DNA of 64,000 bases from positions 558,001-622,000 of the forward strand of contig NIVC01000143.1 in assembly GCA_002269645.1 (NCBI GenBank), in the 5' to 3' direction. Positions 8,691-58,297 of the stretch are shown here, piece after piece. This DNA comes from Macrostomum lignano. Taxonomy: Eukaryota. A program made the position numbers and the translations under genes. The notes beneath the pieces were generated by a model. That model was not told where the DNA came from. It ran no database searches and saw only the letters and a list, made by a program, of their open reading frames with translations. Each line of letters opens with the position of its first letter. Within the stretch, counting starts at the first letter, position 1.

Positions 8691-8946
8691 CTCAAACCTC
8701 AAATTTGCTGAACTAAAATGACCGTTGCCTCAAAGTCAGAACTCCGGGAACTCTCCACAGCAATTGTAGCGTCAAGGTAAACATGCCGTCAAAATTAACA
8801 AGCTGCTAAAAGCCAATGAGAAACTTAAGCCCATCAGGGCGCCTTCAGCCAAAAGCTCAAAACTGCGGTACGATCTGATGCCGAGGTTCTCAATACAGGC
8901 AGACTTCTCTTCTACTGACTCACAGAAGCTTGCAATACGTCACAAA

Positions 8947-9945: not shown

Positions 9946-11879
9946 AACTCAGTACAGCTTCAAAAGTTAGCACAGAAAAGTTTGCCAACAACATTACTTG
10001 GAAAAACTGTCAATTTAAACGACCAACTATTCAAACATTGTTATTCTGATGTTATTCGAATGAATATGTTACAACTCTTCGATTTTTTCAGTACTTGACG
10101 CCTGTTTCTGCTAGATTGAACTTTCGTAGGTAAATCCCGTAGTGACGCTTCATTATTAATCTCTTTGAACGATTAAAAATCAAACAAGCTACTGACAGCA
10201 ACCGGGAAGGTGTGCACCTTTGACGTTAATTAATCGGAACCTGCAGCCAGCATATCCGTTGTGATTCCTAAATTATGTACATAAAAATTTGTTGAAACCA
10301 CATAATCTTTTGTTGTATTGTCTTATCACTTGTTAAAACCATTTTCTAGTGCTTGGACTATGACTATATTAATGTTGTTGTCTGCAATGAGAATTTTCTG
10401 GATGCAGCACCAAATTTTGTGTGCTCATATACCCGCATAGTTTCTTTCTAAATGAATAACTACAGCTAAGTTGACAAAATTTGTGCCCACCTTCAAATAT
10501 ACTTATAACGCACAACTTTATCTTAACCATCCATCCCTGGTGTGCGTTAATGAAATCCTTATGAAATCCTCAAGGACTACTTGAGTAGAAGGACGGTAAA
10601 CAAGTTTTTTGGAAATGTTTAAGAGGCAAGAGTTTTACCGAAAAAATACACATTACGGAGAATGAACGGTTTCAGTTTTTTCAGCACAAAAATCTATTGA
10701 TATTTATAAAGCCTTTCGTTTAGAAAATTAGAATTCTAAGGTATTTTTTTGAACGAATGTCAGTGTCGGAGTCGCATTCAGCGCTAAGCAGACAGCAGAT
10801 CTTTTATGAAGCTGAAAATTCTGCCATTCATCCAAAGCTTGGGCAGCTTTTTGAGATGCTTTTCAAACCCTGGCCTACCAGTCGAATCGGCTGTTTTGCT
10901 TGACTGGCAACTGACTGGCAACAGAGTCCAATCTTGCATTTGTTTTTCTATGCCTTGTTTGGGGCGGCCTCCCCGGCAACCATGCAGTTCTGGCTGGTTA
11001 TATAGGGGTGGGTGCTCCGGCCCTTTGTTTGAGCCCTCGCCCTCCCCCTACCCCCGCAGCCTGAGCCACTGAAAAAATCGATGACGATTCTATAACAAAT
11101 TATCGCCATCGAATCGTTATAGAATGGCTCAAAGGATCTGTACAAATTCAATGATAGATAATTGGCAGAAATTTCGATACGATATTATGTTGCTATATTA
11201 CGAGTATATTAGCTATGGGAACTTAGAATATTGAAAGAACCTTTCAAAGAATATTACGTGCAGAGTTTTTAAGCAAAGAGAATGATTAAACGAGACATAC
11301 ATGTGTAGTACTGTAGGCCCTTGTACATTCATGTGAAAGTAGCTTATTTTTCATCATTTTGATTATACATAATTGCATTTGACCACAGCAGACATAGAAA
11401 CTTTGAAACTGGAAGCATATGCCAGGGAACCCATCATATCCATATCGCTCACAGTCCGATTGTTCGCCAGCCCTTCTGCTTCCTCCAAGAGGTCTTGCAC
11501 CGCATCCAGCAGACTGGAGACCAGCTTAATCTCAGCTCTCGGGTGAGGACTCGGCCTTGCAGGAATCTTCAGTCCAATTCTTAATTCTGCACATTGGATT
11601 CACAAGCTGGCTGAAAGTCAAAGCTTCAGTGGGTCGCTGAAAATGCTTGCTTTTAGCGGCAGTCCGTTGGCTCCAAACGTAACGGAAAGGTCTTCGGCCA
11701 GGCAGATGTTGCAGGAAACACGGCACACTGGCTGTCTCTAGCATATACAACCTGGATAGCCGTCTGAAAACCAGCTAGTTTGACTGGGCGAGGCTTCCCT
11801 CTCTGTTACTCACCCCTTTTCTCGGCCCAAGCCGGTTTGGTGATACTAATGCGTCTCACTATACCTAGAACAAGCTCAT

Positions 11880-15360: not shown

Positions 15361-15954
15361 TCAGTCCGCTTCTTGCTGGATCGGCTCCGCTTCGGCAGCC
15401 AATCTGGCCTGGAGGTCGCGAGTTCGAGGCTCGGATTCGTCGTACAATATTCGCAAACACAGGGAGCAGGTCTGGCACTGCAGCAGTGGCAAGCGGGACA
15501 GCAGCTGGGCTGCGTGAATACCCACCTGTGCAATTGCGGGTGGCTGTTGTGAGCTGTCTGCCTGTCTGTCTGCCTGTCTGTCTGTCTGTCTGCCTGTCTG
15601 TCTGTCTTCCTGTCTGTCTGTCTGTCTGCCTGTCTGTCTGTCTGTCTGCCTTTCTGCCTGCCTGTCTGTCTGTCTGCCTGCCTGCCTGTCTGTCTGCCTG
15701 CCTGTCTGTCTGCCTTTCTGTCTGTCTGTCTGCCTGCCTGCCTGTCTGTCTGTCTGCCTGCCTGCCTGCCTGTCTGTCTGTCTGCCTGCCTGCCTGCCTG
15801 TCTGCCTGCCTGTCTGTCTGTCTGCCTGCCTGTCTGTCTGTCTGTCTGTCTGCCTGTCTGTCTGTCTGTCTGTCTGTCTGTCTGCCTTTCTGCCTGCCTG
15901 TCTGTCTGTCTGCCTGCCTGCCTGTCTGTCTGTCTGTCTGCCTTTCTGCCTGCC

Positions 15955-15999
<45 letters not shown>

Positions 16000-16159
16000 T
16001 TCTGTCTGTCTGTCTGCCTGTCTGTCTGTCTGTCTGCCTGCCTGTCTGTCTGCCTTTCTGCCTGCCTGTCTGTCTGCCTTTCTGCCTGCCTGTCTGTCTG
16101 CCTTTCTGCCTACCTGCCTGCCTGTCTGTCTGCCTGCCTGTCTGTCTGTCTGCCTGTCC

Positions 16160-16254
<95 letters not shown>

Positions 16255-16843
16255 AGCAGACCCAATCCCCGAAAACTCACCCGGTCCCCGCAGCGGCAGT
16301 CCCAAAAGCACTGAAAGCTGCTCAGCAGAGTCCCGTGAGCTGCATCCAGACAAGCGGCTGTGCAATCTTCTTCCATCAGATTGTCCAGTAGTTCGGTCAC
16401 CGTGAGCTCCTCTTGAACAGGGTGGTCCTGCCAGGGGTTGATGCAATTGTTGAAGACACCCCAATATTCCTCACACAGACACCCCAGACACCCTTTGAAA
16501 CCTGAATACCACCCCACCCAGCTTAGATAAATTGATTCACAGGCATTCAAAAGCAAACAGACCTCAACACAACCTCGAGCTGCTCATTCACCTGTTCCCG
16601 CCTGCTCAGCATCAGTGCTGCATCGTACACTCGTCTCAAGCTGGCATCTCGCAGCACAGAATAGGCCATGTTAATCAGATGAAATCCCTCAGCATCTGGG
16701 TTTTTATCTGGGTGATACTTGAGACATGCAGTTTTCCATGCGGCTCTGATACTGGATTGATCGGCTTGCGATGAGACGCCCAACACGCTGTACCAGTCCC
16801 TGCTCACAGGTATTGACTCACCAAACTGCTTTGCCGAAGTCAT
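15361..16843 (-). CDS. DNAJC24: DnaJ homolog subfamily C member 24 / DPH4 (J domain plus CSL zinc finger), 3 exons, 187 aa
   Basis: Exons 16843-16592, 16427-16281, 15525-15361, all phase 0 with GT-AG ends. J domain contains HPD (YHPDK). The CSL finger is CRCG...CQTCSL. Confidence 0.92.
15555..16255. repeat. (GTCT/GCCT)n microsatellite in DNAJC24 intron 2
   Basis: Tetranucleotide run that explains ORFs 15333..16391 and 15994..16464. Confidence 0.97.
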
Positions 16844-16929
16844 TTGTGAGTCACAAAAAACAGCTGGAACAGCTAGAATTTGCAAGAAAGAGACATTTTA
16901 AACATAAATTATTTGAAAAAATCTTACTG

Positions 16930-17168
16930 CAACCGACATAGCCATATCTGAAGGCAGCGTACGGCTGTTTAGTCCAAGGTCTGGGGGTCACTACACACAC
17001 TAAATTACCCCAGCTAATGCTGGCACCCATTTTACAGCTGAGTGAACTGAAGCAATGCAGAGTTAAGTGTCTTGCTCAAGGACACTAGTTGTTTCGGTGA
17101 GGTCGAGAATCGAACCCCCGACATTCAAGTCGTAAGTCCGACGCTCTAACCACTAGGCTACAACCCCC
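16930..17168 (-). mobile_element. tRNA-derived CORE-type SINE, copy 1
   Basis: Minus-strand head has A box (TAGCCTAGTGGTT) and B box (GGTTCGATTC), followed by GTGTCCTTGAGCAAGACACTTAAC...CTGTAAAATGGG, which resembles the MIR/CORE domain. Confidence 0.8.
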
Positions 17169-18029
17169 CTTATTCTTTTAATGCTACTGAAAGTAGAAAT
17201 AAGAAAATAAGAAAATATAAACAACAAAAAGTTAACGAAACACAATGAAACAGAATTTTATATTTACATAACATACAAGTATAACGTATACAATATAACG
17301 GATTCTAAGAAATTTTATTACAAACATAAGAGCCATAGTTAACTGATAGTTACAATTACAACAACATATTATGCTTCTTTTTAACGAATCATAAAATTCC
17401 AAGAAATCAACTTTAAATCAATAAGGGTCTGTAACCACCGAGAAGGCAAGCAGTCGGAGGCCTATGAGACGCCAAAGGTCAATTGGAATTTGTTGGTAGG
17501 CCATCAAAGGGAGAATTAGTGTTTACATTTAAGCCATGGCTAGTAGGGAGGCTTTAAGGCCTGATGCTTTTTCGCATTAATCAGCTTTTTTCGGTCCAAT
17601 TCGGTCCATCCGGTGTTGAGAATGCGGAGAACCTTATCTGTGAACGTCCGCTACCTATAAATAAGGGCTACCGGGCGAGCGACCATCTAACCTCTTGGAT
17701 AGTCATTGCGGGACACCCCAGGACCAGACGTGTCTTGTTAATGAAGATTTACGCAACTATAAGCTAGTCTTCAATTAAGAATATAATAAAAAGAAATCCG
17801 AAAATCAACATTTGGTTTTTTTCGACGCGTTTCGCACACCAAGGTGCATCGTCAGGTATATTGTTTGAAACGAAAGGTGTGAGTAAGCGAATTTACCTGA
17901 TTTAAGGGTATAAATTTCAATGATAAAAAACTGAATCAAAGACAGTATAGTAGTGACAGACTGCTTCAAGTTTAGGTCAATTTCGTAGCCATGTAACTAG
18001 TAATTAAAACTTTGTTGATCTTCCACAAT

Positions 18030-18270
18030 AAAGGTAAAGTTATGATCCAATACCACGACTGAAAGGTCGGGGCTACGATTCTCGACCCACTAGGAACAAT
18101 AATTTGTGTCCTTGAGCAAGACACTCAACTCATGCATTTCTCCAGTTCACCCTGCTGTAAAATGGGGTAATTATGGGTGTGTGGCGACCTACCAGTCCTT
18201 GGACTGAATAGCCGTACGCAGCCTTCAGTTGCAAATTAGGACAGATTTAATAATAAATTATTATTATTAT
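18030..18270 (+). mobile_element. tRNA-derived CORE-type SINE, copy 2 (decayed head)
   Basis: Same core (GTGTCCTTGAGCAAGACACTCAAC...CTGTAAAATGGG) and tail (CCTTGGACTGAATAGCCGTACGC) as copy 1, in opposite orientation, with a (TTA)-rich end. Confidence 0.78.
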
Positions 18271-18312
18271 CATTATTTAAATGAACCTAAACTTGAAGAA
18301 TTCATTTAGCTA

Positions 18313-18834
18313 CTACTGATTAGCAGCAAACTGAGTAGTAGTATTGCTAGCAAGATCATGCTCAGAGGCAGCCTGACTCAGGGGAGCCAGCTCGCCCACA
18401 GTGGCCACAGATGCAGCATAGTGCTCAGGATAAGCTCTCTCAGTCAGCCGTTTGATATTATTAATCCTTTTAAACACCAGCTCAAGATCTTTCCGCAACT
18501 CGTCCAGAGTCTGCTGGTGCTGCCGGAACTCCCCACTCAGCTGGCGAAATCGTCCCAGCGAGAGTTCATTGAAATTTGACAGCATATGATTGGCCCGCTC
18601 GAATCTCTCAAGCATCTCAGTCTGAGACACTGTGATCACGTGCAGGGAGGGCCGGTCAATCATGGATAGAAATGAGCCAGTGAGAGCTTCCGGTCTCTGG
18701 GGATTCACTAATGTCTGCCGGCGCAGCTGCTGCTGTCTCTGCTGAGGAGACATCTGACCATCGCTGTCATCAGCTGCTGCTGCTGCTGCTGCTGTGGCAC
18801 CATCATGGCTGCTGCTGCCGGAGTTCGATGTCAT
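18313..18834 (-). CDS. KXD1: KxDL motif-containing protein 1 (BORC subunit), single coding exon, 173 aa
   Basis: Q..MLERFERANHML.NFNELS..R...RKDLELVFKRI..IK....AYP matches the KxDL family signature. An acceptor-like CACTTCAG lies 5 nt before the ATG. Confidence 0.9.
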   Translation of the reverse strand: MTSNSGSSSHDGATAAAAAAADDSDGQMSPQQRQQQLRRQTLVNPQRPEALTGSFLSMIDRPSLHVITVSQTEMLERFERANHMLSNFNELSLGRFRQLSGEFRQHQQTLDELRKDLELVFKRINNIKRLTERAYPEHYAASVATVGELAPLSQAASEHDLASNTTTQFAANQ

Positions 18835-18890
18835 TCAGTCTGAAGTGGATGTTGCACTGCAGTGATACCTAGTTCAACCGTACACCTGAG

Positions 18891-18923
<33 letters not shown>

Positions 18924-19327
18924 GCCTGTCTGTCTGTCTGTCTGTCTGTCCCTATTTCTATAGTATACATTCTATTGAATTCCTTCAATTTCTTCAGTAC
19001 ATATTTATTCACTATACACCAAAATAGGATGTTGTGTACTGGAAGTGCCTGCCCTAGCGTGTATATACAAGTATGTCTTGCCTAAATCTTTAAAAGAAAA
19101 TAGCTAACATAAATTCGTTACTATCAGAATGACGGAAGTAACACGGCTACTTCTAAAGATTAAGTAAAAATATTCAGAACCGAATTTTTTATTTAAAACA
19201 CTAAGATTTTTCAAACAGACACAAATGACTTGTAGAAGTTATAAAATTTAATTCAACGGTTGAAAAGCGGGACATTGCAGCCCATGTAGCTCTGGGATAT
19301 GGTAGAATTTTGTGCTTTGCAGATTGA

Positions 19328-21135
19328 GGCAGGGAGAGAAGCAGGGAGAGAGGCAGGGAGAGAGGCAGGGAGAGAGGCAGGGAGAGGCAAGGAGAGAGAC
19401 AGGGAGAGAGGCAGAGAGAGGTAGGGGGAGAATCAGAGAGAGGCAGGGAGAGAGGCAGGGAGAGAAGGGAGAGAGGCAGGGAGAGGCAGGGAGAGAGGCA
19501 GGGAGAGAAGGGAGAGAGGCAGGGAGAGAAGCAGAGAGAGGCAGGGAGAGAGGCAGGGAGAGAGGCAGAGAGAGAGGCAGGGAGAGAGGCAGGGAGAGAG
19601 GCAGGGAGAGAGGCAGGGAGAGAGGCAGGGAGAGAGGCAGGGAGAGAGGCAGGGAGAGAAGGGAGAGAGGCAGAGAGAGGCAGGGAGAGAGGCAGGGAGA
19701 GAGGCAGGGAGAGAGGCAGGGAGAGAAAGGAGAGAGGCAGAGAGAGACAGGGAGAGAGGCAGGGAGAGAGGCAGGGAGAGAGGCAGGGAGAGAGGCAGGG
19801 AGAGAGGCAGGGAGAGAGGCAGGGAGAGAGGCAGGGAGAGAGGCAGGGAGAGAGGCAGGGAGAGAAGCAGGGAGAGAGGCAGGGAGAGAGGCAGGGAGAG
19901 AGGCAGGGAGAGGCAAGGAGAGAGACAGGGAGAGAGGCAGAGAGAGGTAGGGGGAGAATCAGAGAAAGGCAGGGAGAGAGGCAGGGAGAGAGGCAGGGAG
20001 AGAAGGGAGAGAGGCAGGGAGAGGCAGGGAGAGAGGCAGGGAGAGAGGCAGGGAGAGAAGGGAGAGAGGCAGGGAGAGAAGCAGAGAGAGGCAGGGAGAG
20101 AGGCAGGGAGAGAGGCAGAGAGAGAGGCAGGGAGAGAGGCAGGGAGAGAGGCAGGGAGAGAGACAGGGAGAGAGGCAGGGAGAGAGGCAGGGAGAGAGAC
20201 AGGGAGAGAGGCAGGGAGAGAGGCAGGGAAAGAGGCAGGGAGAGAGGCAGGGAGAGAGGCAGGGAGAGAGGCAGAGAGAGAGGCAGGGAGAGAAGGGAGA
20301 GAGGCAGAGAGAGGCAGGGAGAGAGGCAGGGAGAGAGGCAGGGAGAGAGGCAGGGAGAGAGGCAGGGAGAGAAAGGAGAGAGGCAGAGAGAGACAGGGAG
20401 AGAGGCAGGGAGAGAGGCAGGGAGAGAGGCAGGGAGAGAGGCAGGGAGAGAGGCAGGGAGAGAGGCAGAGAGAGGCAGGGAGAGAGGCAGGGAGAGAGGC
20501 AGGGAGAGAGGCAGGGAGAGAGGCAGGGAGAGAGGCAGGGAGAGAGGCAGGGAGAGAAGCAGGGAGAGAGGCAGGGAGAGAGACAGGGAGAGAGGCAGGG
20601 AGAGAGGCAGGGAGAGAGGCAGGGAGAGAAAGGAGAGAGGCAGAGAGAGACAGGGAGAGAGGCAGGGAGAGAGGCAGGGAGAGAGGCAGGGAGAGAGGCA
20701 GGGAGAGAGTCAGGGAGAGAGGCAGGGAGAGAGGCAGGGAGAGAAGGGAGAGAGACAGGGAGAGAGGCAGGGAGAGAGGCAGGGAGAGAGGCAGGGAGAG
20801 AGGCAGGGAGAGAGGCAGGGAGAGAAGGGAGAGAGGCAGGGAGAGAGGCAGGGAGAGAGGCAGGGAGAGAGACAGGGAGAGAGACAGGGAGAGAGGCAGG
20901 GAGAGAGGCAGGGAGAGGCAGGGAGAGGCAGGGAGAGAGGCAGGGGGAGAAGGGAGAGAGGCAGGGAGAGAGGCAGGGAGAGAAGGGAGAGGCAGGGAGA
21001 GAGGCAGGGAGAGAGGCAGGGAGAGATGCAGGGAGAGAGGCAGGGAGAGAGACAGGGAGAGAGGCAGGGAGAGAGACAGGGAGAGAGGCAGGGAGAGAGG
21101 CAGGGAGAGAGGCAGGAAGAGAAGGGAGAGAGGCA
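19328..21135. repeat. 12-bp minisatellite (GCAGGGAGAGAG)n, ~1.8 kb
   Basis: Tandem units between ATPSCKMT and KXD1. Source of false ORFs 19248..21334. Confidence 0.97.
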
Positions 21136-21182
21136 ACTCAAAAAACAGCAGCAAAATAACAAGTAGGATGCAGCATCCGGCA

Positions 21183-22925
21183 TCAACTCCAAGCTCTCGC
21201 AGCACCGTTAGTCCTGGCAGCAGCAGCAGCAGCCGCAGGTGGCCGGTACAGCCACACGGAGTCCACCCCGTCAATAATCTGGTCGACATGTCTCCAGTCG
21301 GGCAGTCGGTACCGACAAGCCACCACGCAGGCATCTGGATGCAACTCAGCCGCCAGCTTGGCTTGCAAGGGTTTCATTAAAGACTTCACCCCGAATATCA
21401 CCACAACATCGTATGTGGACAGCGAGTGGCGGAGCAGGTCGGTTCGTAGGAATTTCGGACGATGAATGCAGTTGAGACGGGAACAGGTGAGGCGACTGTA
21501 CAGCACCAGGGGCCAGTTGAGCTCGACACCAGTGGCTTGGTACAGGCGGAGTGCCGCTTCGCGTACAATGCGACCGTCTCCGGAGCCAAGGTCTATCTGG
21601 TGTGAGGGAGTTAAGCGGTTCTTCATGGTGTGACTCTTCATGGTTTGATTCTTCATGGTGTGATTCTTTATGGGTTGATTCTTCATGGTGTGATTCTTCA
21701 TGGTGTAATTCTTCATGGTGTGATTCTTCATGGTGTGATTCTTCATGGTGTGATTCTTCATGGTGTAATTCTTCATGGTGTGATTCTTCATGGTGTGATT
21801 CTTCATGGTGTGATTCTTCATGGTGTGATTCTTCATGGTGTGATTCTTCATGGTGTGATTCTTCATGGTGTGACTTCTCATGGTGTGATTCTTCATGATG
21901 TGATTCTTCATGGTGTGATTCTTCATAGTGTGACTCTTCATGATCTGATTCTTCATGATGTGATTCTTCATAGTGTGACTCTTCATGATGTGATTCTTCA
22001 TGGTGTGACTCTTCATGGTGTGATTCTTCATGGTGTGATTCTTTATTGTGTGATTCTTCATGGTGTGATTCTTCATGGTGTGATTCTTCATGATGTGATT
22101 CTTCATGGTGTGATTCTTCATAGTGTGACTCTTCATGGTGTGATTCTTCATGGTGTGATTCTTCATGTTGTGATTCTTCATGATGTGATTCTTCATGATG
22201 TGATTCTTCCTGATGTGATTCTTCATGATGTGATTCTTCCTGATGTGATTCTTCCTGATGTGATTCTTCATGGTGTGATTCTTCATGATGTGATTCTTCA
22301 TGGTGTGATTCTTCATGGTGTGATTCTTCATGATGTGATTCTTCATGGTGTGATTCTTCATGGTGTGATTCTTCATGTTGTGATTCTTCATGGTGTGATT
22401 CTTCCTGATGTTATTCTTTAAGTTGTGATTCTTCCTGATGTTATTCTTTATGGTGTGACTCTTCAAGGTATGATTATTTATGGTGTCACTCTTCATGGCG
22501 CGATTTTTTATGATGTGATTCTAACAGTGATTTGAGAAGATAGAAAAACATTTAAAAAAGTTTTTTTAAAGTGATATTTCAATGAGTGTAGACGGCCGCT
22601 CACTAACCAGTCTCACTGGCATGCTGGGCACCTTAGTAATTCTGTTATTCTTCTTGAGCAAGCTGAATACATTGGCCACCTGGCTGTCGGTGGCCGGTAC
22701 AAACGGCAGCGCGTGGCGCCTCAGCGCCGGCGTCAGAAAGGGCGCCGCCGCGAACACCATGCCTAGGGCGCCGGCCGCGCAAGCGGCGCCAACCGCCAGA
22801 CGGCGCAGGGGAGATGCGACTGCGGTCGGAGCTGACGGTGAAGATGATGAAGCGCCTGGGAGGCTGTAAATTGCAGCCTCATCACTGATGGCGCAGTTGG
22901 ATTCCGAGTCTGGCTGGAGTATCAT
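21183..22925 (-). CDS. ATPSCKMT: ATP synthase c-subunit lysine N-methyltransferase (FAM173B-like), 2 exons
   Basis: Exon 1 22925-22608 (donor GTTAGT; alternative donor after 22632) and exon 2 21596-21183. Motifs [44 protein letters not shown] and GVDSVWLY. Confidence 0.9.
21622..22520. repeat. 15-bp minisatellite (GTGTGATTCTTCATG) filling the ATPSCKMT intron
   Basis: Tandem units that produce the KNHTM-repeat false extension of ORF 21183..22496. Confidence 0.97.
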
Positions 22926-23049
22926 TTTTTGGCGAATGCTTTATGATTTCTGCTTTTGCAATCACTTTTCCAGGGGGTTATAAGGTCTTCAGGGTCATAG
23001 GATACATCTTAGGGTAAAAAATTGTTTACGTTCATGGAATGTTCTTTAG

Positions 23050-23530
23050 GGTCATGGGGTATTATGTAGACTCATAATGGAATATTCTTCATGGTCATTG
23101 GATATTTTTTGGCGTCTTGGGATACACTTTAAGGTCATGGGATATTCTTTATGGTCATTGGATATTCTTTGGCGTTTTGGGATATTCTTTAGGGTCATGG
23201 GATATTCTTTGGGGTCTTGAGATATTCTTTAGGGTCATAGGATATTCTTTGGGGTCTTGGGATATTCTTTAGGGTCATTAACTATCCTTAAGGGTCATGG
23301 GATATTATTTAGGGTAATGAGATGTTCTTTAGGGTCATGGGATATTCTTTGGGGTCTTGGGATATTCTTTGGGGTCATGGGATATTCTTTAGGGTCATGG
23401 GATATTCTTTGGGGTCATGGAATATTCTTTGGGGTCATGGGATATTCTTTAGGGTCATGGGATATTCTTTAGGTCCTAGGATATTCCTGGGATATTTTAG
23501 GATATTCTTTAGGTCCTAGGATATTTTTAA
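23050..23530. repeat. 20-bp minisatellite (GGTCATGGGATATTCTTTAG)
   Basis: Tandem units in the intergenic spacer. Confidence 0.93.
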
Positions 23531-23718
23531 GGTTCATGGGATCATACGACGTACTAACGGTTATACAACACTTTTGGGGTCATACTATACGATAGCCACT
23601 ATCATTATCACAAACTCGTAAATCTTTCAGCAAGACTATTGGCTATAATACCAACTATTTTCAAATAATATATTTGTAAACTTTTCAACTAGACTATGAG
23701 CTCACACAATGCACAAAC

Positions 23719-24519
23719 TCATTGCGACAGACTTCTAAAAGCAGCAACACAGGCAGATAAATCAACACCAACAGTGTTAGAAGCAGAAGTTCTTCGTTTC
23801 TTAGAGTCGGCAGCAGCGGCACTGCAGCTCAAGGCAGCAGACAAATCGAAAGCAACTCTCAAGCACAATTCTCCAACAGTTTCTGCGCTGGCAGGAGGCA
23901 CTCTCTTAAAAACATTAAAAGTTAAACAGTGATAAGCCAGTAGGCCAGCCTTTTGGTTGCCATGGTGACACAGGACAGTCAGTTGATTAGATTTTTCGTT
24001 GCTATCCGCTTCAAATGCCTTAGCAACGAAGTTGGCGGCTTCAATCAGCTGATTCCTAGTCAGACTGCCGCCAGGCAGTGCAGGGCAGCAGGCTACTGCA
24101 GTTTGGTCCAGTCTCAAAGTGGCCTCACATCGACCAGCCAAGGTCAAAGCGGTGCTTGACAAATTTCTCAACTGATTGACAATTGACAGACACCTGGAGT
24201 GAGATCGAATCAGCCTGCTGATCTCAGCCTCATCCGGTGATTCTAAATTATTCGATAAAGACTCGTTTGAACTCGAACTGGACGATGAAGAATAAGATTC
24301 ATGATCACTATCAGCTTCACTTGTGCTTTTATTCTCATCATCAGCTTTGGACAGAGCTAGTTTTAAATCTTGTCTCAGCTGACGAGTAGAAGAGTGCAGT
24401 CTGACGCTTGTGGCGCGGTAGTCCAGCGCCAAGTCTACAAGTTGACGCGAATGACGCTGCCACAGTTGTGACACTTCGGGATCCTTGCGCGAAGATAAGG
24501 GATTAGGGAATAAGTGTAG
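23719..24519 (-). CDS. Met-less 266-codon open frame, possibly CINP-like (CDK2-interacting protein)
   Basis: Open from directly after TTTTTAG (24519) to TGA at 23719 with no ATG codon. Coiled-coil-like helices flank an S/E-rich linker. PAL...T...E...K....L.H.G....LL.Y recalls the CINP C-terminus. Family assignment is tentative. Confidence 0.7.
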   Translation of the reverse strand, partial: LHLFPNPLSSRKDPEVSQLWQRHSRQLVDLALDYRATSVRLHSSTRQLRQDLKLALSKADDENKSTSEADSDHESYSSSSSSSSNESLSNNLESPDEAEISRLIRSHSRCLSIVNQLRNLSSTALTLAGRCEATLRLDQTAVACCPALPGGSLTRNQLIEAANFVAKAFEADSNEKSNQLTVLCHHGNQKAGLLAYHCLTFNVFKRVPPASAETVGELCLRVAFDLSAALSCSAAAADSKKRRTSASNTVGVDLSACVAAFRSLSQ

Positions 24520-24549
24520 CTAAAAATCATCTTGTCATGGCTATCTAGA

Positions 24550-25152
24550 TTATCCTGAACTGATCCTTAGAGTCCCCAGTCTACTCAGAACTGATCCTTG
24601 GAGTCCCCAGTCTACTCAGAACTGATCGTTGGAGTCCCCAGTCTACTCAGAACTGATCGTTGGAGTCCCCAGTCTACTCAGAACTGAATCTTATAGTCCC
24701 CAATCTACTCAAAACTGATCCTTGGAGTCCCCAGACTACTTAGAACTGATCCTCAGAGTCCTCAGTCTACTCAGAACTGATCCTGAGAGTCCCCAGTCTA
24801 CTCAGAACTGATCCTCAGAGTCCCCAGACTACTTAGAACTGATCCTCAGAGTCCCCAGACTACTTAGAACTGATCCTCAGAGTCCCCAGACTACTTAGAA
24901 CTGATTCTTAGAGTCCCCAGACTACTTAGAACTGATTCTTAGAGTCCCCAGTCTACTCAGAACTGATTCTTAGAGTCCTCAGTCTACTCAGAACTGATTC
25001 TTAGAGTTCCCAGTCTACTCAGAACTGATTCTTAGAGTTCCCAGTCTACTCAGAACTGATTCTTAGAGTTCCCAGTCTACTCAGAACTGATTCTTAGAGT
25101 TCCCAGTCTACTCAGAACTGATCCTTAGCGTCCACAGTCTACTCAGAACTGA
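24550..25152. repeat. 31-bp minisatellite (GAGTCCCCAGTCTACTCAGAACTGATCCTTA)
   Basis: Tandem units between the TPRKB stop and the Met-less ORF. Confidence 0.95.
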
Positions 25153-25337
25153 TATATTACTTAGAAAATCAATTACTTTACAAAAAACCAAGCAAAAAAA
25201 ACATTTCAAAGAAGCAATAAAGACCTAATTTCACGTTAACAACAATTTACTTTGACACAATAATTGAACAAATAAAAACTTGCAATTAGGCTACTGATAG
25301 TAATATAAACAAGAGAGCAACAATTAAAATTGCAGTC

Positions 25338-26810
25338 CTACACGGTAACCACATCTTTGCAAGCGACTCTGGTTACAAAACAGTAACTGAGAGAATCTCC
25401 AGATTCCTTTGACAGGGCCTGCTCCTCCGGTGTGACTTTGTACAGTTCAAATAGTTCGACAAGATCGCACTCGGGATTCGTGTCGGGCCACAGTGAATGG
25501 CTAGATTCGCAATCTAGTTGACTGGTCAATTTGGATTCTAATCCGTCTAGGCTAGCGGACGATTTATCAGCTGATTGGGGATGAAACAGCACAGCAACTA
25601 CACTGGCAGTGCTGGAGTTCATACCGAACTTGGCTAAAGATTGACTGATATTTTTTGTTGGCGATAGACAGTACAGCAGTTCCGTGTGAATTGATTTAGT
25701 TGCCATGCGAGACTCCGATTGATGAGCCAAAGCTTGATTGGCGGCTGTGAGCAGGTGCAAGCTGTCGTACACCTGAGATCAATGACAAATTTATGTCATT
25801 TAGAAGGCCGCTAATACCCTATGGGTTATTTATTCATAAAAGGTCGCTAATACCCCTACAGGTCATTTAGAAGACCGCTAATACCCCATGGGTCATTTAG
25901 AAGGTCGCTAATACCGTTTTGGGTCACTTAGAAGGTCAAAAGATACCCCCAGGGGTCATTTAGAAGGTCGCTAATACCCCAGGGGTCATTTAGAAGATCG
26001 CTAATACCCCAGGGGTCATTTAGAAGGTCGCTAATACCCCCAGGGGTCATTTATTGAATAGAAGGTCGCTAATACCCCCAGGGGTCATTTAGAAGGTCGC
26101 TAATACCCCAGGGGTCATTTAGAAGGTCGCTAATACCCCCAGGGGTCATTTAGAAGGTCGCTAATACCCCAGGGGTCATTTAGAAGGTCGCTAATACCCC
26201 CAGGGGTCATTTAGAAGGTCGCTAATACCCCCAGGGGTCATTTAGAAGGTCGCTAATACCCCAGGGGTCATTTAGAAGGTCGCTAATACCCCCAGGGGTC
26301 ATTTAGAAGGTCGCTAATACCCCATGTGGTCATTAAGAAGGTCGCTAATACCATATTTGGGTCATTTAGAAGGTCGCTAATACCCGATAGGTCATTAAGA
26401 AGGTCGCTAATACCCTTGTGGGTCACTTAGAAGGTCAATAATACTCCTACGGGTCATTTAGGTCGCTAATACCCCCAGGGGTCATTTAGAAGGTCGCTAA
26501 TACCCCCAGGGGTCATTTGGAAGGTCACTAATACCCCAGGGGTCATTTACAAGGTCACTAATACCCCATGGGCCATTTAGAAGGCTGCTAATACCCTTGA
26601 CTTCTTCAGAATCTCACTAATACAAGCACAGTTGCTGCAAAAGCTCACTAATTTAGTTGACACCAAAGCTCCAGCAAGGTGACCTTGGATAGCAGCAGTG
26701 TGCACCTCTGCAGGATTTTTCAATCCTTGAAACAGGCGCATTGAAATAGTCACATTAGGTACCGACATACTTGGATAGCGCATCCAACCAGTGCTTGAAG
26801 TTGTCATCAT
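25338..26810 (-). CDS. TPRKB: KEOPS complex subunit CGI-121/TPRKB, 2 exons, 198 aa
   Basis: Exon 1 26810-26649 (donor GTGAGC) and exon 2 25772-25338, phase 0. Motifs LFQGLKN, HLLTAANQAL, M.TKSIHTELLYCLSPTKNISQSLAKFG and TRVACKDV. Confidence 0.92.
25790..26600. repeat. ~29-30-bp minisatellite (GGGTCATTTAGAAGGTCGCTAATACCCCAG) in the TPRKB intron
   Basis: Tandem units fill almost the whole intron. Confidence 0.95.
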
Positions 26811-28919
26811 AGTAGCAGAATGTGTTTTTTTATATAATTTTTTTAGAATTAGGTCTAAAAATAATAATAAACCAAGAATGTCAAAAATATGAATATTGAA
26901 TTAATAATTATACTATTTCATGACAAAAATCACTAGATAGAGATAATTTGACAATGACCAAATTTTTATCAAAAGTTAAAATGCAAATGTTAAACACTAA
27001 AACAATAAATATTAAGCATGATCAAAGTTATTTGACAATCTCATAAAATTTATCTTAGATTAAAACTTCCAAATTGAATCAACCAAATACTTGCTTTAAA
27101 ATGGAATAGGAAAGTTGACAATTGTCAATTGAAATACCAATTAGTCATTTTAATGTGACACAAAGATTTGGAACAAGTTGAGAGTTGAGTATGAATGTTG
27201 TAGCTTATAAATGAATAACAATAGTAATTAACTATAAAACCATTTAATGCATACTGCACTTTGCACTATAATAGTACTTGAATTTTGTTTATTTAGTTTA
27301 CCTTACATACAAATTAGATAAACCAAAATATTTCAATTAGTTTTACTTAAATCAAATTTAAAAAATTATTTAGAAACAAATAGTAAATAGCAATCTCTAC
27401 TAAATATTGACAAAATGCCTTATCTGCTATTGTGTAACATTTGGAAATTAATATTTGTAGTGAAGCTGAATACTAGTTATAAAAATTCAATATGCATATA
27501 TATAATATATAAAATATATATGTAGACTCTGCATATGATTATGATTCTATAAATTTAGACATTGCTTCTGTAGTGTTGCAAGAATTGGGGGTTGCTTGGA
27601 TTTGGGTCTAGAGATCTTGGAATTGCACTGCTATTACCAGTGTAATGGTTTACTCTTTGGCTTTTGAGGTGGGATAGACTGCTGTTGTCCGGGTTAACCC
27701 TAGCAAACACTTTTATAGGGGCTGAGACTGGGGAGAATTCTAAAATCAAGGGAGTGCTGCCACCAGCATGGGGACTATAGGATTGGCAATGAAGGGGTCT
27801 GATTAGGTTCCATGCAAATAAATAATGCTAGAACAACTGAAGGAGTCTCAGAGATTTCAATGTCCAAATGATAGGACTCAATGGTAGCAAATGGCCTAAG
27901 CGGCGCAGTCCTAGCACTGTCAAATGTCCATGCTTGAGCATGTCTGAGTTTAGCTCTCAGAGGACTCCTAACTCCTACAAACCTAATAACTATGTCTTGC
28001 ACAGATGGGCAGCAAGGAATAAATCTATGCACCTATAGCAGCAACAGACTCACAACTAACTAAGTCTAATAGCTATTTCTTAGAATTATGCACATGTGCT
28101 ACAACTGCAAAATCACCATCACTCTTATTATTCATGCCTATATCGCAAATAGGCAATCAGCAGAATGGCTTCAGCCAACTGATTTCCTGCCAATAAGGTA
28201 GGCTGGGAAATCAGAGCTATAGCACTAGCAATGCTCTACCAAGACCTGTTCAGGAGCATGCTTTCTGCTTGAGCACTGCAATGCTCTACCAAGACCTGCT
28301 CAGGAGCTTGCGTCTGCTTCTAGTGATGCTTTGCTCTACCAAGACCTGCTCAGGAGCTTTGCTTCGCTGTTAACTGGCGCTAGAGCACTAGACTTGGAGA
28401 AGGCTCTTGACAAGTCTTCACGAGGTGGTTCTTAGGAGAAAATCAGACAACGGTCTACATGCATTGATATAGAATGTAGAGGGTAGAGCGTTTGAGCATT
28501 CCATGGCTTGACTATGGATTGGCAGCCTGAAGAGTGTGGATAATTATACATAACAAATATTGATTAAACATAGGGGGAGAGTAGCCGACAGTTGCCTCAA
28601 GCCATTAGTGAAAGTAGCATGCCAAAATTGGGCTTATGCGCACAAGGCTGCATAAAGGGAGGGTTAAGCTTAGGACACAGGGTCCATGAAACCCTTAGTA
28701 TAAAAGAATGACACATGGGAAGAGGCTTAGATGGCAAAGGAATGAGAGAGCAGAAGGGGAGAAAGTCCAGCGAGTACACAAGGAGAGGAATGCAGCTAAC
28801 TAGATTTGTGTACACTGAGCAATTGTATGTGGTAAGCTAGGCAACAACAGTACATGCAAGCGCCAAATTTGGTAGCTTCGACTAACTAACCCTAGGCTAG
28901 AAAGCTTCCTAGTTTCCTA

Positions 28920-31103: not shown

Positions 31104-32538
31104 GTTTCCTATGTTAATGAGCCTCAAGCCTCGTTATGATGACTCAATTATACCACATTATGCAACTTCTCAGTGCTAAAAAAGGCTACTTAGAGTGCAT
31201 GGAGGCAGCAGAACAGTTCCTATTCCAGATACTAGCAGTGCCTAAGATGTGAATGTGGCCCTATGCTTGTAGCAGAAGGCTGTGGCCACATCATTTCAAA
31301 AATGAAAATTAATGGGTTTGGCAATGCCTAAGTAGAAAGAAAACCATAGGCATTGTTACTAATCATTTATTTGAAACAAATAACATATATAAAACATAAT
31401 TTAATGACTATTATTAACAACTCACTATTTTAATCCAACAATAACATCATAACATATATGGCCTATTCGCTACTCCAGTCTTAACCCAATTAAAAATATA
31501 TAACTATTAATTTCTACAATAAATTATCAAAAGTAAAATATTACTTAGATATATGCCAAAAAATATCAAAAAGATATTGCAATAATAAGTGGCAATAAAG
31601 GACCTGTTTTGCATTGCAACAATATAGGACTGTAGGATCATTTCTTGCATTACAACCTTTTTTATAGTCTTATATACTAAAATAACTATGACATAGGCCT
31701 GCTCTGTGGCATAATTTTTCTAATGGATTGTTCTATACACAAGATACTTTGTGCCAACCATTTTTTCATGTCTGTTGTACACTGGAATTTTCCAGCATAA
31801 GACTTGGTTGGGAATATATTAGTAAAGACCAAAGAGCAACCCTACCAGAATACATTAGAATTGCTGTTAGAAATTTTATTACTAAATTAAGAATACACAA
31901 CGACAACTTTGGTGATATCAGTAGAATAATTTAAAAAGAGAAGTAAAACCATAGGAAAATAATTAAGTTTTTGAATTTTTTAGAGGTAGATTCAAAAGCC
32001 TTGTTACAACGAAGTGACCAAGTGTTGGCTTGGGGAGTGTTGACGAAGTGACCAAAAGTTCCATTATATGAATGATGTGTATCTGATACAACTTGAATCT
32101 TGCTTGATAATTACCAGTGTAACATATTTTAAATCTACTATGCGTTGGGTCTTTACTTTTTACTTAAGCCTAAGATTTATAATTCGCTTCTTTTAAAAAC
32201 AACAATGATCGCCGTTCTTTGAAACTTAAGGACTTGAAATGTATAAAAACTTAGGCCGCTATAACAACATTTACAGGTCATATATGTTACTGCTAGAATT
32301 AAAATGTTTTTTATGATACATAAAGTAACTTTAAACTTAAAAAACATTGTTTTTAAGTGTAATACTAAAAGACAAAATTATATATTAATTGATGTCAAGC
32401 GACCTATCCCAAATTCAAAATTTCGCGTCTTGCAAGAAAGTTCAATCTGAACATACAAGAGGAGGCTTCAGCCTTCAGGCGAATCACGCCTTGGTCATTT
32501 ACTGTTTTTCTGTAACTTAAGGTGCTTGTTAATAGGTA

Positions 32539-58272: not shown

Positions 58273-58297
58273 ACGGGGGTTAAAAGCAGGGCGGCTA

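What the first reader, a model, noticed from the sequence alone, without database searches (positions are those of the whole stretch)
15361..26810. Five co-oriented housekeeping genes forming a candidate trans-spliced operon
Seen: TPRKB, the Met-less ORF, ATPSCKMT, KXD1 and DNAJC24 are all on the minus strand. After removing minisatellites and SINEs, the spacers are only a few hundred bp to about 1 kb. Acceptor-like AGs lie just upstream of the KXD1 (CACTTCAG 5 nt before ATG) and DNAJC24 starts. Established: operons resolved by SL trans-splicing in nematodes, tunicates and flatworms are enriched for conserved housekeeping genes. Inference: one promoter upstream of 26810 drives a polycistron linking tRNA t6A (KEOPS), ATP synthase methylation, BORC lysosome positioning and diphthamide synthesis.
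Basis: partly seen in the sequence, partly recalled or inferred. Interest (0 to 1): 0.72.

Follow-up and report, generated by a model that had tools for sequence, protein, structure and literature searches.

The report
Five-gene trans-spliced operon, Macrostomum lignano
This is a tight, repeat-swollen cluster of five same-strand genes in the flatworm Macrostomum lignano that fits the species' already published kind of spliced-leader operon, so it is a real but ordinary example.

Summary
The window is Macrostomum lignano Mlig_3_7, contig NIVC01000143.1, bases 558001-622000. TPRKB, an ORF with no Met codon, ATPSCKMT, KXD1 and DNAJC24 all lie on the minus strand. The spacers shrink to 257, 271, 470 and about 1,000 nt once tandem arrays and two SINEs are removed. 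The nearest neighbours are on the opposite strand, 7.7 and 9.5 kb away.

M. lignano has one 35-nt spliced leader (SL) ending in AUG. About 15% of its genes are published as operon members, defined by the same repeat-adjusted <1 kb rule.

GenBank locus tags in the window and two 92-99% identical paralogous copies place adjacent genes of this cluster in shared transcriptional units. Those units were cut at SL-read and poly(A) sites. Annotated 5'-partial CDS starts abut AG acceptors.

The Met-less ORF has zero ATG codons in all three copies, with pN/pS of 0.10-0.18. It becomes a normal ORF only if the SL supplies its AUG. ATPSCKMT probably relies on the SL AUG too.

I did not see SL reads, and a single promoter for all five genes remains inferred. 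Verdict: interpretation supported, a new member of a known kind, low interest.

The parts
26811..27560 (-). Candidate promoter region of the cluster. Non-repetitive, AT-rich stretch directly upstream of the TPRKB ATG, with TATATAAA at 26836-26829.
   Evidence: GC is 22% here against 48% for the cluster, and the TATA-like octamer starts 26 nt before the ATG. No gene is called between here and the divergent GGACT-family gene at 34506. In the L002 paralogue the annotated TPRKB CDS, which is 5'-partial, begins 3 nt before the ATG and not at an AG. Function is inferred, not shown.
25338..26810 (-). Gene 1, TPRKB (CGI-121, KEOPS subunit), 198 aa. Exons 26810-26649 and 25772-25338. The intron is filled by a 31-bp minisatellite (25795-26596).
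   Evidence: Pfam CGI-121 E=1.7e-29. Model. GenBank PAA89634.1, BOX15_Mlig025748g1. Tandem array.
24484..25337 (-). Spacer 1. TPRKB 3'UTR, a 31-bp minisatellite (24557-25153), then a pyrimidine tract and the AG acceptor at 24485-24484.
   Evidence: 854 nt in total, 257 nt non-tandem. No GTRAG donor and no canonical AATAAA/ATTAAA. Sequence.
23719..24483 (-). Gene 2, ORF2. A 254-codon lineage-restricted ORF with no ATG codon. Its start codon is inferred to come from the 3'-terminal AUG of the spliced leader.
   Evidence: The deposited CDS is 5'-partial and starts at the first base after AG. There are 0 Met codons in all three paralogous copies, and an in-frame TAA 12 nt upstream in two copies closes other options. 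pN/pS is 0.10-0.18. No homologues were found.
22926..23718 (-). Spacer 2. ORF2 3'UTR plus a 20-bp minisatellite (23021-23542).
   Evidence: 793 nt in total, 271 nt non-tandem.
21183..22925 (-). Gene 3, ATPSCKMT (FAM173B-type lysine methyltransferase), 243 aa. Exons 22925-22608 and 21596-21183. The intron is filled by a 15-bp minisatellite (21619-22522). A consensus acceptor CTCCAG (22919-22914) lies inside the apparent first codons.
   Evidence: Homologues 45-50% identical, named ATP synthase subunit C lysine N-methyltransferase. Model. An SL-AUG joined at 22913 reads MPDSES... in frame. In paralogue L002 the deposited CDS (Mlig008015g3) is 5'-partial and begins at DSES, downstream of the genomic ATG. 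This gene is not annotated in the window copy.
18835..21182 (-). Spacer 3. ATPSCKMT 3'UTR running through a 1.8-kb 12-bp minisatellite (19326-21135), AATAAA at 19193-19188, (GACA)15 at 18891-18950, and acceptor CTTCAG at 18845-18840.
   Evidence: 2,348 nt in total, about 470 nt non-tandem. The deposited annotation calls a spurious 477-aa ORF from 21183 to 19201, which shows that an assembled transcript crosses the array. PAS and acceptor positions. From PAS to acceptor is about 350 nt.
18313..18834 (-). Gene 4, KXD1 (KxDL, BORC/BLOC-1-related), 173 aa, single exon.
   Evidence: Pfam KxDL E=7.6e-21. Exact match to the deposited protein. An SL-AUG would open a 3-codon uORF whose TGA overlaps the main ATG.
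16844..18312 (-). Spacer 4. KXD1 3'UTR, two inverted tRNA-derived SINE copies (18055-18228 and 16948-17170), and acceptors TTCTAG (16878-16873) and TTCCAG (16869-16864).
   Evidence: Inverted repeats with 85-89% complementary arms. Rfam tRNA hit at 17098-17167. Deposited 5'-partial DNAJC24 CDS starts sit 1-2 nt after these AGs in all three copies, as expected from frame trimming.
15361..16843 (-). Gene 5, DNAJC24/DPH4 (J domain plus CSL zinc finger), 187 aa from the ATG at 16843. Exons 16843-16592, 16427-16281 and 15525-15361. The last intron is filled by (CTGT)n at 15554-16254.
   Evidence: Pfam DnaJ E=7.5e-18 and Zn_ribbon_CSL E=1.5e-6. Model. GenBank PAA89630.1, BOX15_Mlig022980g1.

Best explanation
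The cluster is a spliced-leader (SL) operon of Macrostomum lignano.

Proposed mechanism:
1. RNA polymerase II starts in the AT-rich region just upstream of TPRKB (about 26811-27560).
2. It transcribes about 11.5 kb of the minus strand through all five genes. That includes roughly 5.4 kb of minisatellites that have expanded inside introns, 3'UTRs and intercistronic regions.
3. The precursor is cut into five mRNAs by 3' cleavage/polyadenylation of each upstream cistron.
4. The single 35-nt M. lignano SL is trans-spliced onto AG acceptors at 24483 (ORF2), 22913 (ATPSCKMT), 18839 (KXD1) and 16872/16863 (DNAJC24).
5. Because the SL ends in AUG, it also donates the initiator codon. ORF2 has no ATG of its own. 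ATPSCKMT probably depends on it too, because its genomic ATG lies upstream of the consensus acceptor.
6. For KXD1 and DNAJC24 the SL-AUG opens only a short uORF that ends on the main ATG.

Shown here: gene identities, strand, spacing, acceptor sequences, the Met-less conserved ORF, and the shared transcriptional-unit tags in GenBank.

Inferred: SL addition at each named site, and a single promoter.
For: Species and background:
- The KXD1 ORF is an exact match to GCA_002269645.1 contig NIVC01000143.1. NIVC is M. lignano Mlig_3_7.
- Published biology: one SL, CGGTCTCTTACTGCGAAGACTCAATTTATTGCATG. About 30% of genes are SL-spliced and 10,458 genes lie in operons of 2-9 genes. Operons are defined as same-strand neighbours with a repeat-adjusted distance under 1 kb. 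The acceptor motif is [T/C]TNCAG.

This cluster against those criteria:
- Five adjacent minus-strand genes with repeat-adjusted spacers of 257, 271, 470 and about 1,000 nt.
- Opposite-strand neighbours 7.7 and 9.5 kb away.
- The annotation pipeline cut RNA-seq transcriptional units into genes only at experimental SL-read and poly(A) peaks, and gave unit clusters a shared prefix.
- Tags: copy L002 has TPRKB, ORF2 and ATPSCKMT as Mlig008015g1, g2, g3, and KXD1 and DNAJC24 as Mlig025748g5, g6. Copy L003 has TPRKB and ORF2 as Mlig014127g1, g2, and KXD1 and DNAJC24 as Mlig022980g2, g3. The window's TPRKB is Mlig025748g1.
- Deposited 5'-partial CDS starts fall at AG| boundaries for ORF2 (two of three copies) and for DNAJC24 (three of three copies).
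- YTNCAG lies next to three of the four downstream starts, against a background of 1.9 per kb.
- Apart from one at 16927, about 55 nt before the DNAJC24 acceptors, no GTRAG donor lies between an upstream cistron's 3' region and the next acceptor.

ORF2:
- 0 Met codons in all three copies.
- The SL-AUG is in frame at 24483, with an upstream in-frame stop.
- pN/pS is 0.10-0.18.
- An SL-donated initiator AUG is established in flatworms (Cheng et al. 2006, as cited in PMC9851317).
Against: - No SL-containing reads, poly(A) tags or TSS data could be inspected. The SL sites are inferred from annotation boundaries and motifs.
- Transcriptional-unit prefixes change between ATPSCKMT and KXD1 in both paralogous copies, and between KXD1 and DNAJC24 in the window copy. 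The authors attribute such splits to repeats, but an internal promoter would look the same.
- The KXD1-DNAJC24 spacer is about 1 kb after SINE removal, right at the published threshold.
- The ORF2 acceptor (GCGCAAG|) lacks the YTNCAG consensus.
- The L002 ATPSCKMT CDS start is 3 nt, not 0-2 nt, after the CTCCAG acceptor.
- No canonical AATAAA/ATTAAA occurs in the first two spacers.
- A GTAAG donor at 16927 could give DNAJC24 a short cis-spliced 5' exon instead.
- The three copies are 92-99% identical throughout, so conservation of order among them says nothing about selection.
Confidence: 0.62

Rival explanations
1. The cluster is two or three shorter SL operons rather than one. An example would be TPRKB-ORF2-ATPSCKMT and KXD1-DNAJC24, with an internal promoter in the ATPSCKMT-KXD1 spacer and/or the KXD1-DNAJC24 spacer.
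For: In copy L002 the unit prefixes are exactly Mlig008015 (g1-g3) then Mlig025748 (g5, g6). In L003 they are Mlig014127 (g1, g2) then Mlig022980 (g2, g3). In the window, DNAJC24 has a prefix of its own, Mlig022980g1. The two longest spacers are these two (2,348 and 1,440 nt). 75% of published M. lignano operons have two genes and 18% have three.
Against: The authors state that units tend to break in repeat-rich intercistronic regions, and the break coincides with the 1.8-kb minisatellite. The prefix Mlig025748 is shared by the window's TPRKB (g1) and L002's KXD1/DNAJC24 (g5, g6). Given 95% clustering of whole units, this implies an assembled unit containing both ends. An assembled transcript crosses the minisatellite to 19201. 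That leaves only about 350 nt between the AATAAA at 19193 and the consensus KXD1 acceptor.
Confidence: 0.24
2. These are five independently transcribed genes, each with its own promoter and some individually SL trans-spliced. They happen to be co-oriented in a small gene island.
For: Co-orientation of five genes has a chance probability of 1/16. 60% of SL-spliced M. lignano genes are not in operons. Raw spacers of 0.8-2.3 kb are long by operon standards.
Against: Multi-gene transcriptional units are annotated across three of the four junctions in the paralogous copies. The non-repetitive spacer sequence is only 257-470 nt for three junctions, and that must also hold the upstream 3'UTRs. The flanks are 7.7 and 9.5 kb of TE-rich DNA.
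Confidence: 0.09
3. ORF2 is not a separate SL-initiated cistron. It could be an alternative 3' exon of TPRKB, a near-cognate (GTG/CTG) initiated ORF, or non-coding spacer that happens to be open.
For: The acceptor AAG| is non-consensus. A GTG lies at codon 4. There are no homologues in 5.8 billion clustered or 1.84 billion representative proteins. The AlphaFold model has low confidence, pLDDT 52.
Against: It is annotated as a separate gene (g2) cut from its unit in all three copies. The frame is open for 255-266 codons in non-repetitive DNA in all three copies. Synonymous differences outnumber non-synonymous ones 9 to 3-5, giving pN/pS of 0.10-0.18, and the only indel is 9 nt long and so in frame. 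TPRKB ends with its own stop codon and is full length against Pfam CGI-121.
Confidence: 0.1

Closest known systems
Macrostomum lignano SL operons (Wudarski et al. 2017, PMC5730564; Ustyantsev & Berezikov 2021, PMC8629364)
   Same: Same species and genome assembly. Same-strand adjacent genes, repeat-adjusted intergenic distance under 1 kb, and a single 35-nt SL. Members are mostly genes conserved with human (4 of 5 here, against about 70% genome-wide). Intercistronic regions are inflated by repeats. The first gene is apparently not trans-spliced, as in 18% of published operons.
   Different: Five genes is at the rare end of the published size range: 75% have two genes, 18% have three, and the maximum is nine. 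This particular cluster is not described individually in any paper I could search. The window copy is mis-annotated, with ATPSCKMT missing.
Flatworm SL 3'-terminal AUG used as initiator methionine (Cheng et al. 2006, J Biol Chem 281:733, cited in PMC9851317)
   Same: The SL ends in AUG. The acceptor places that AUG in frame with an ORF that has no start codon of its own (ORF2), and probably with ATPSCKMT as well.
   Different: That work was done in Schistosoma mansoni by experiment. Here the conclusion rests on sequence and annotation only, and the gene concerned is an internal cistron of an operon.
Caenorhabditis elegans operons (SL2-type)
   Same: A polycistronic Pol II precursor is resolved by 3' end formation coupled to SL trans-splicing. 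Members are functionally unrelated housekeeping-type genes. Operons hold 2-8 genes.
   Different: C. elegans uses a dedicated SL2 for downstream genes and has intercistronic regions of about 100 nt. M. lignano has one SL, and here the raw spacers are 0.8-2.3 kb because of minisatellites and SINEs.
Operons of parasitic flatworms (Schistosoma, cestodes; PMC12582326)
   Same: A single type of SL resolves the polycistrons, and cis-splicing is rare at acceptors that resolve polycistrons.
   Different: Those operons are defined with intergenic distances of 300 bp or less and mostly comprise gene pairs. I could not test whether this cluster is conserved in those species.

Membership tests
M. lignano SL operon (criteria of Ustyantsev & Berezikov 2021) | Immediately adjacent genes lie on the same strand and are not interrupted by an opposite-strand gene. 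| tested here: met
   Five consecutive minus-strand genes. The only other called genes within 10 kb are on the plus strand outside the cluster.
M. lignano SL operon (criteria of Ustyantsev & Berezikov 2021) | Intergenic distance is under 1 kb after subtracting tandem repeats and transposable elements. | tested here: met
   The spacers are 257, 271 and 470 nt, and about 1,000 nt for KXD1-DNAJC24. All were measured stop codon to next start, so true transcript-to-transcript distances are shorter. The fourth spacer is borderline. I had no M. lignano repeat library, so only the two SINE copies could be subtracted from it.
M. lignano SL operon (criteria of Ustyantsev & Berezikov 2021) | Downstream genes carry the SL, shown by SL-containing RNA-seq reads at their 5' ends. 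| not testable with these tools
   Only indirect evidence is available. Genes named gN were cut from units at SL or poly(A) peaks. Deposited 5'-partial CDS starts abut AG in 5 of 7 cases. YTNCAG lies at three of four starts. ORF2 needs an external AUG. No read data are held here.
M. lignano SL operon (criteria of Ustyantsev & Berezikov 2021) | Polycistronic precursor RNA spans the neighbouring genes. | tested here: inconclusive
   Shared unit prefixes cover TPRKB-ORF2-ATPSCKMT (L002), TPRKB-ORF2 (L003) and KXD1-DNAJC24 (L002, L003). The ATPSCKMT-KXD1 junction is bridged only by inference. That inference rests on the window's TPRKB being Mlig025748g1, L002's KXD1 being Mlig025748g5, and the numbering gap g2-g4. 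The tags of the three middle window genes are not shown by the tool.
M. lignano SL operon (criteria of Ustyantsev & Berezikov 2021) | A single upstream promoter drives the cluster, with no internal promoters. | not testable with these tools
   There is only a candidate: a 22%-GC, 750-bp unique region with TATATAAA 26 nt before the TPRKB ATG.
SL-donated initiator AUG (flatworm type) | The SL ends in AUG. | tested here: met
   The published M. lignano SL ends ...TTGCATG.
SL-donated initiator AUG (flatworm type) | The recipient ORF lacks its own in-frame AUG, and the acceptor puts the SL AUG in frame. | tested here: met
   ORF2 has 0 ATG codons in 255-266 open codons in three copies. AG|GAT at 24483 is in phase 0, and an in-frame stop lies upstream.
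SL-donated initiator AUG (flatworm type) | Translation actually starts at the SL AUG. | not testable with these tools
   This needs ribosome profiling, N-terminal proteomics or a reporter.

The most novel reading that the evidence does not exclude
ORF2 could be a Macrostomum-restricted, possibly young, protein-coding gene lodged between conserved cistrons of an operon. It would be expressed only because SL trans-splicing hands it a cap, a 5'UTR and its start codon. That would make it a concrete example of an AUG-terminated SL lowering the barrier to gene birth inside polycistrons.

Two of the five cistrons (ORF2 and ATPSCKMT) would then depend obligatorily on trans-splicing. This would lock the operon in place even though 47% of it has been invaded by tandem repeats.
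Probability: 0.15. Interest if true: 0.5.

Novelty: new member of a known kind. Interest (0 to 1): 0.2.

Why it matters
It matters little beyond annotation. SL operons, repeat-inflated intercistronic regions and the enrichment of conserved genes among SL-spliced genes are all published for this species. This cluster was very probably counted in the genome-wide tally.

It has three modest uses:
- It is a clean worked example of a rare five-gene operon. The promoter region is well bounded for M. lignano transgenesis, which is the one flatworm system with stable transgenics.
- It offers two cistrons that seem to need the SL's AUG. That gives a simple test bed for SL-dependent translation initiation in a free-living flatworm.
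- It exposes an annotation error. In the window copy and in copy L003, a spurious ORF inside a minisatellite (477 aa and 412 aa) is deposited in place of ATPSCKMT.

Tried and rejected
- **Homologue searches for ORF2.** The word-indexed search found only its own paralogues. Full HMMER against 1.84 billion representatives added only a 1,030-aa tandem-repeat artefact. Pfam and PDB sequence searches gave nothing below E=0.05. AlphaFold2 without an alignment gave an all-helical model with pLDDT 52, too poor for a fold search, so none was run.
- **Synteny outside M. lignano.** The KXD1 search at E<=1e-8 returned only M. lignano, and that threshold was too strict for the tool. Three unnamed ENA contigs carrying the closest ATPSCKMT relatives have no TPRKB, KXD1 or DnaJ neighbours. 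Their organisms are unknown and their genes were called in a prokaryotic manner, so this says little. No other flatworm genome was reachable.
- **Synteny among the three M. lignano copies.** I rejected this as evidence because the copies are 92-99% identical across genes, spacers and minisatellites, which indicates recent duplication.
- **Supplementary tables.** The three M. lignano papers hold no entry for these locus tags or gene names, and no paper mentions the tags.
- **SL RNA gene.** None is present in the window. The SL had 0 matches with up to 3 mismatches, and Rfam found only the SINE's tRNA-like head.
- **Sigma-70 promoter and terminator scan.** This does not apply to a eukaryote, so I ignored it.
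- **L003's TPRKB as a pseudogene.** The 122-aa call suggested this, but exon 1 is intact, so the short call is an annotation difference.
- **Alternative ORF2 acceptor TTTTTAG| at 24520.** It is in frame in the window copy but closed by an in-frame TAA in the other two copies.

Full report
**Source of the window**

The KXD1 reading frame (18834-18313, minus strand) is an exact match to a protein called on contig NIVC01000143.1 of assembly GCA_002269645.1. The accession NIVC00000000 is the Mlig_3_7 genome of the free-living flatworm Macrostomum lignano. Comparing locus ranges gives window = NIVC01000143.1:558001-622000.

**Checking the observation**

I read the minus strand and built intron-exon models. 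The products are 198, 254, 173 and 196 aa, the same as the deposited gene calls on that contig.

| Gene | Coordinates (minus strand) | Evidence |
|---|---|---|
| TPRKB | 26810-26649 + 25772-25338 | Full-length match to Pfam CGI-121, E=1.7e-29 |
| ORF2 | 24483-23719 | 254 codons, deposited as a 5'-partial CDS |
| ATPSCKMT | 22925-22608 + 21596-21183 | 243 aa, 45-50% identical to proteins named ATP synthase subunit C lysine N-methyltransferase |
| KXD1 | 18834-18313 | Single exon, Pfam KxDL E=7.6e-21 |
| DNAJC24/DPH4 | 16843-16592 + 16427-16281 + 15525-15361 | J domain E=7.5e-18 and CSL zinc finger E=1.5e-6 |

All five genes are on the minus strand.

Tandem Repeats Finder shows seven separate arrays inside the 11,450-bp interval. 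Together they cover 5,396 bp, or 47%. They fill one intron each of TPRKB, ATPSCKMT and DNAJC24, and three of the four spacers.

The spacers, measured from stop codon to next start:
- 854 nt, 257 of them non-tandem.
- 793 nt, 271 non-tandem.
- 2,348 nt, about 470 non-tandem.
- 1,440 nt, with no tandem array.

The last spacer holds two inverted copies of a tRNA-derived SINE, at 16948-17170 and 18055-18228. Removing them leaves about 1 kb.

The quoted acceptor CACTTCAG, 5 nt before the KXD1 ATG, is exact. DNAJC24 has TTCTAG and TTCCAG 29 and 20 nt before its ATG.

**Is it more than chance?**

Co-orientation of five genes alone has a probability of 1/16. Three further points add weight.
- The nearest annotated genes are on the other strand. 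One is a GGACT-family gene 7.7 kb upstream (34506-36118). The other is a large gene ending about 9.5 kb downstream. The DNA in between is rich in transposable elements.
- The published trans-splice acceptor motif [T/C]TNCAG occurs at 1.9 per kb on this strand. It sits within -30..+12 of three of the four downstream starts. About 0.08 per start is expected, giving my estimate of P~0.002.
- ORF2 has no ATG codon at all.

**What is known for this species**

M. lignano has a single 35-nt spliced leader, CGGTCTCTTACTGCGAAGACTCAATTTATTGCATG. [quoted passage not shown] Ustyantsev and Berezikov assigned 10,458 genes (about 15%) to operons (PMC8629364).
- Their rule was same-strand neighbours, with the downstream gene SL-spliced and the intergenic distance below 1 kb after subtracting repeats.
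- The size distribution was 75% two-gene, 18% three-gene, and a maximum of nine genes.
- About 70% of SL-spliced genes are conserved with human.

The genome annotation itself was built from RNA-seq 'transcriptional units', many of which are precursor RNAs holding several genes. The TBONE pipeline cut these units into genes only at experimentally supported SL-read and poly(A) peaks. Units that clustered at 95% identity received the same name prefix (PMC5730564).

**Locus-specific evidence from the deposited annotation**

Three copies of the whole cluster exist in the assembly: the window, L002 on NIVC01001521 and L003 on NIVC01000038. All have the same five-gene order. They are 92-99% identical across genes, spacers and minisatellites. 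They are therefore recent duplicates, and their shared order says nothing about selection.

Their locus tags are informative:

| Copy | TPRKB | ORF2 | ATPSCKMT | KXD1 | DNAJC24 |
|---|---|---|---|---|---|
| Window | Mlig025748g1 | not shown | not shown (junk ORF deposited here) | not shown | Mlig022980g1 |
| L002 | Mlig008015g1 | Mlig008015g2 | Mlig008015g3 | Mlig025748g5 | Mlig025748g6 |
| L003 | Mlig014127g1 | Mlig014127g2 | not retrieved (junk ORF deposited here) | Mlig022980g2 | Mlig022980g3 |

The tool does not show the tags of the three middle window genes. The numbering gap g2-g4 fits them exactly. Adjacent genes of this cluster therefore share RNA-seq-derived units across at least three of the four junctions.

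The prefix Mlig025748 joins a TPRKB-containing unit with a KXD1/DNAJC24-containing unit. Under 95% clustering of whole units, that implies an assembly containing both ends. This last step is my inference.

The unit boundary between ATPSCKMT and KXD1 coincides with the 1.8-kb minisatellite. The authors say that repeat-rich intercistronic regions are where units tend to break.

An assembled transcript does cross that array. The deposited annotation calls a spurious 477-aa ORF from 21183 to 19201 in the window, and a 412-aa equivalent in L003. These end just before an AATAAA at 19193. That leaves about 350 nt to the consensus KXD1 acceptor.

**Acceptor sites and start codons**

The deposited 5'-partial CDS starts of the downstream genes sit as follows:
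- Directly after AG for ORF2 in two of three copies.
- 1-2 nt after AG for DNAJC24 in all three copies, as expected from frame trimming.

Two cases do not fit. ORF2 in L003 starts 6 nt further in. ATPSCKMT in L002 starts 3 nt after CTCCAG.

In L003 the KXD1 acceptor is mutated to CTTCTG, and that copy's CDS is annotated as 5'-partial.

TPRKB in L002 begins 3 nt before its ATG and not at an AG. The only upstream AG acceptor candidate in the window (TTTTTAG, 44 nt before the ATG) is lost in L002. This fits TPRKB being the non-trans-spliced first gene, as in 18% of published operons.

**The Met-less ORF**

ORF2 is open for 255-266 codons in all three copies, with no Met codon. Between copies, synonymous differences outnumber non-synonymous ones 9 to 3-5, giving pN/pS of 0.10-0.18. 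The only indel is 9 nt long and so in frame. It therefore behaves as a coding gene.

Joining the SL at 24483 gives ATG|GAT CCC..., which is in frame and yields 255 codons. In two copies an in-frame TAA 12 nt upstream rules out any acceptor further upstream.

Use of the SL's terminal AUG as initiator is established in flatworms (Cheng et al. 2006, as cited in PMC9851317).

ATPSCKMT probably works the same way. A consensus CTCCAG lies within its apparent first four codons. An SL-AUG joined at 22913 reads MPDSES... in frame. The L002 annotation starts at DSES, downstream of the genomic ATG.

For KXD1 and DNAJC24 the SL-AUG opens uORFs of 3 and 8 or 11 codons. In each case the TGA stop overlaps the main ATG as ATGA.

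ORF2 has no detectable relatives. Its structure model is unreliable.

**Mechanism and its rivals**

The best-supported reading is a single Pol II precursor. It starts in the 22%-GC unique region upstream of TPRKB, which carries TATATAAA at 26836-26829. It is resolved by polyadenylation and SL trans-splicing into five mRNAs. I put this at about 0.62.

The main rival is two or three shorter operons with an internal promoter at one of the two long spacers, at about 0.24. It is supported by the unit splits and by the rarity of operons with more than three genes.

Independent monocistronic genes are unlikely, at about 0.09, given the shared units and the short unique spacers.

Points that remain weak:
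- No reads were inspected.
- No canonical poly(A) signal occurs in the first two spacers.
- The ORF2 acceptor is non-consensus.
- A GTAAG at 16927 could make a short cis intron ahead of DNAJC24.
- The last spacer sits at the 1-kb threshold.

**Comparison with known systems, and novelty**

This is the same kind of object as the published M. lignano operons, and mechanistically like operons of nematodes and parasitic flatworms. It differs from C. elegans in using one SL and in having kilobase-scale, repeat-inflated spacers.

No paper I could search names these locus tags. The cluster is therefore a new, individually undescribed member of a known kind. It is unusual only in size (five genes), in having one or two cistrons that need the SL's AUG, and in being half tandem repeat.

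Interest is low.

Noticed in passing
window 19201-21183 (-); L003 8090-9328: The deposited annotation has a spurious ORF read through the 12-bp minisatellite, 477 aa in the window copy and 412 aa in copy L003. The real ATPSCKMT gene (22925-21183) is not annotated in either copy. Only copy L002 carries it (PAA66902.1, 238 aa, 5'-partial).
   Followed up: yes
window 18832-18839 and 16841-16872 (-): If the SL is added at the predicted acceptors, its AUG opens uORFs in both KXD1 (3 codons) and DNAJC24 (8 or 11 codons). Each uORF ends in a TGA that overlaps the main start codon (ATGA). The same stop-start overlap in two neighbouring cistrons may be chance or may reflect termination-reinitiation.
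   Followed up: partly
window 16948-17170 and 18055-18228: Two copies of a tRNA-derived SINE lie in inverted orientation about 900 nt apart in the KXD1-DNAJC24 spacer, with 85-89% complementary arms. In a polycistronic precursor they could pair into a long double-stranded RNA stem.
   Followed up: partly
window 15361-26810: 47% of the cluster (5,396 of 11,450 bp) is made of seven unrelated tandem arrays with periods of 4, 4, 12, 15, 20, 31 and 31 bp. Each sits in an intron, 3'UTR or spacer and never in coding sequence. All are shared with the two paralogous copies.
   Followed up: partly
L003 about 9980-10000 (equivalent to window 18840-18845): In paralogous copy L003 the KXD1 acceptor CTTCAG is changed to CTTCTG, and the deposited KXD1 CDS there is 5'-partial (170 aa). 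That copy may be processed differently or not at all.
   Followed up: no
window 34506-36118 (+): The upstream neighbour is a divergently oriented gene of the gamma-glutamyl cyclotransferase-like family (Pfam GGACT/AIG2_2, 308 aa). It could share a bidirectional regulatory region with the cluster, although 7.7 kb of repeat-rich DNA lies between them.
   Followed up: no
window 42188-43330 (-), 45378-45815 (+), 55631-58455 (-): Transposable-element remnants lie outside the finding. They include a piggyBac-type DDE transposase ORF (Pfam DDE_Tnp_1_7, E=7.5e-43), a PIF1-like helicase fragment (Helitron-like, E=1.4e-15) and a long ORF block with a weak tyrosine-recombinase N-terminal match (possibly DIRS-like).
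   Followed up: partly
window 8770-9942 (+) and 32536-33234 (+): Two non-repetitive ORFs of 391 and 233 codons have no Pfam match and no deposited gene call. Their nature is unknown.
   Followed up: partly
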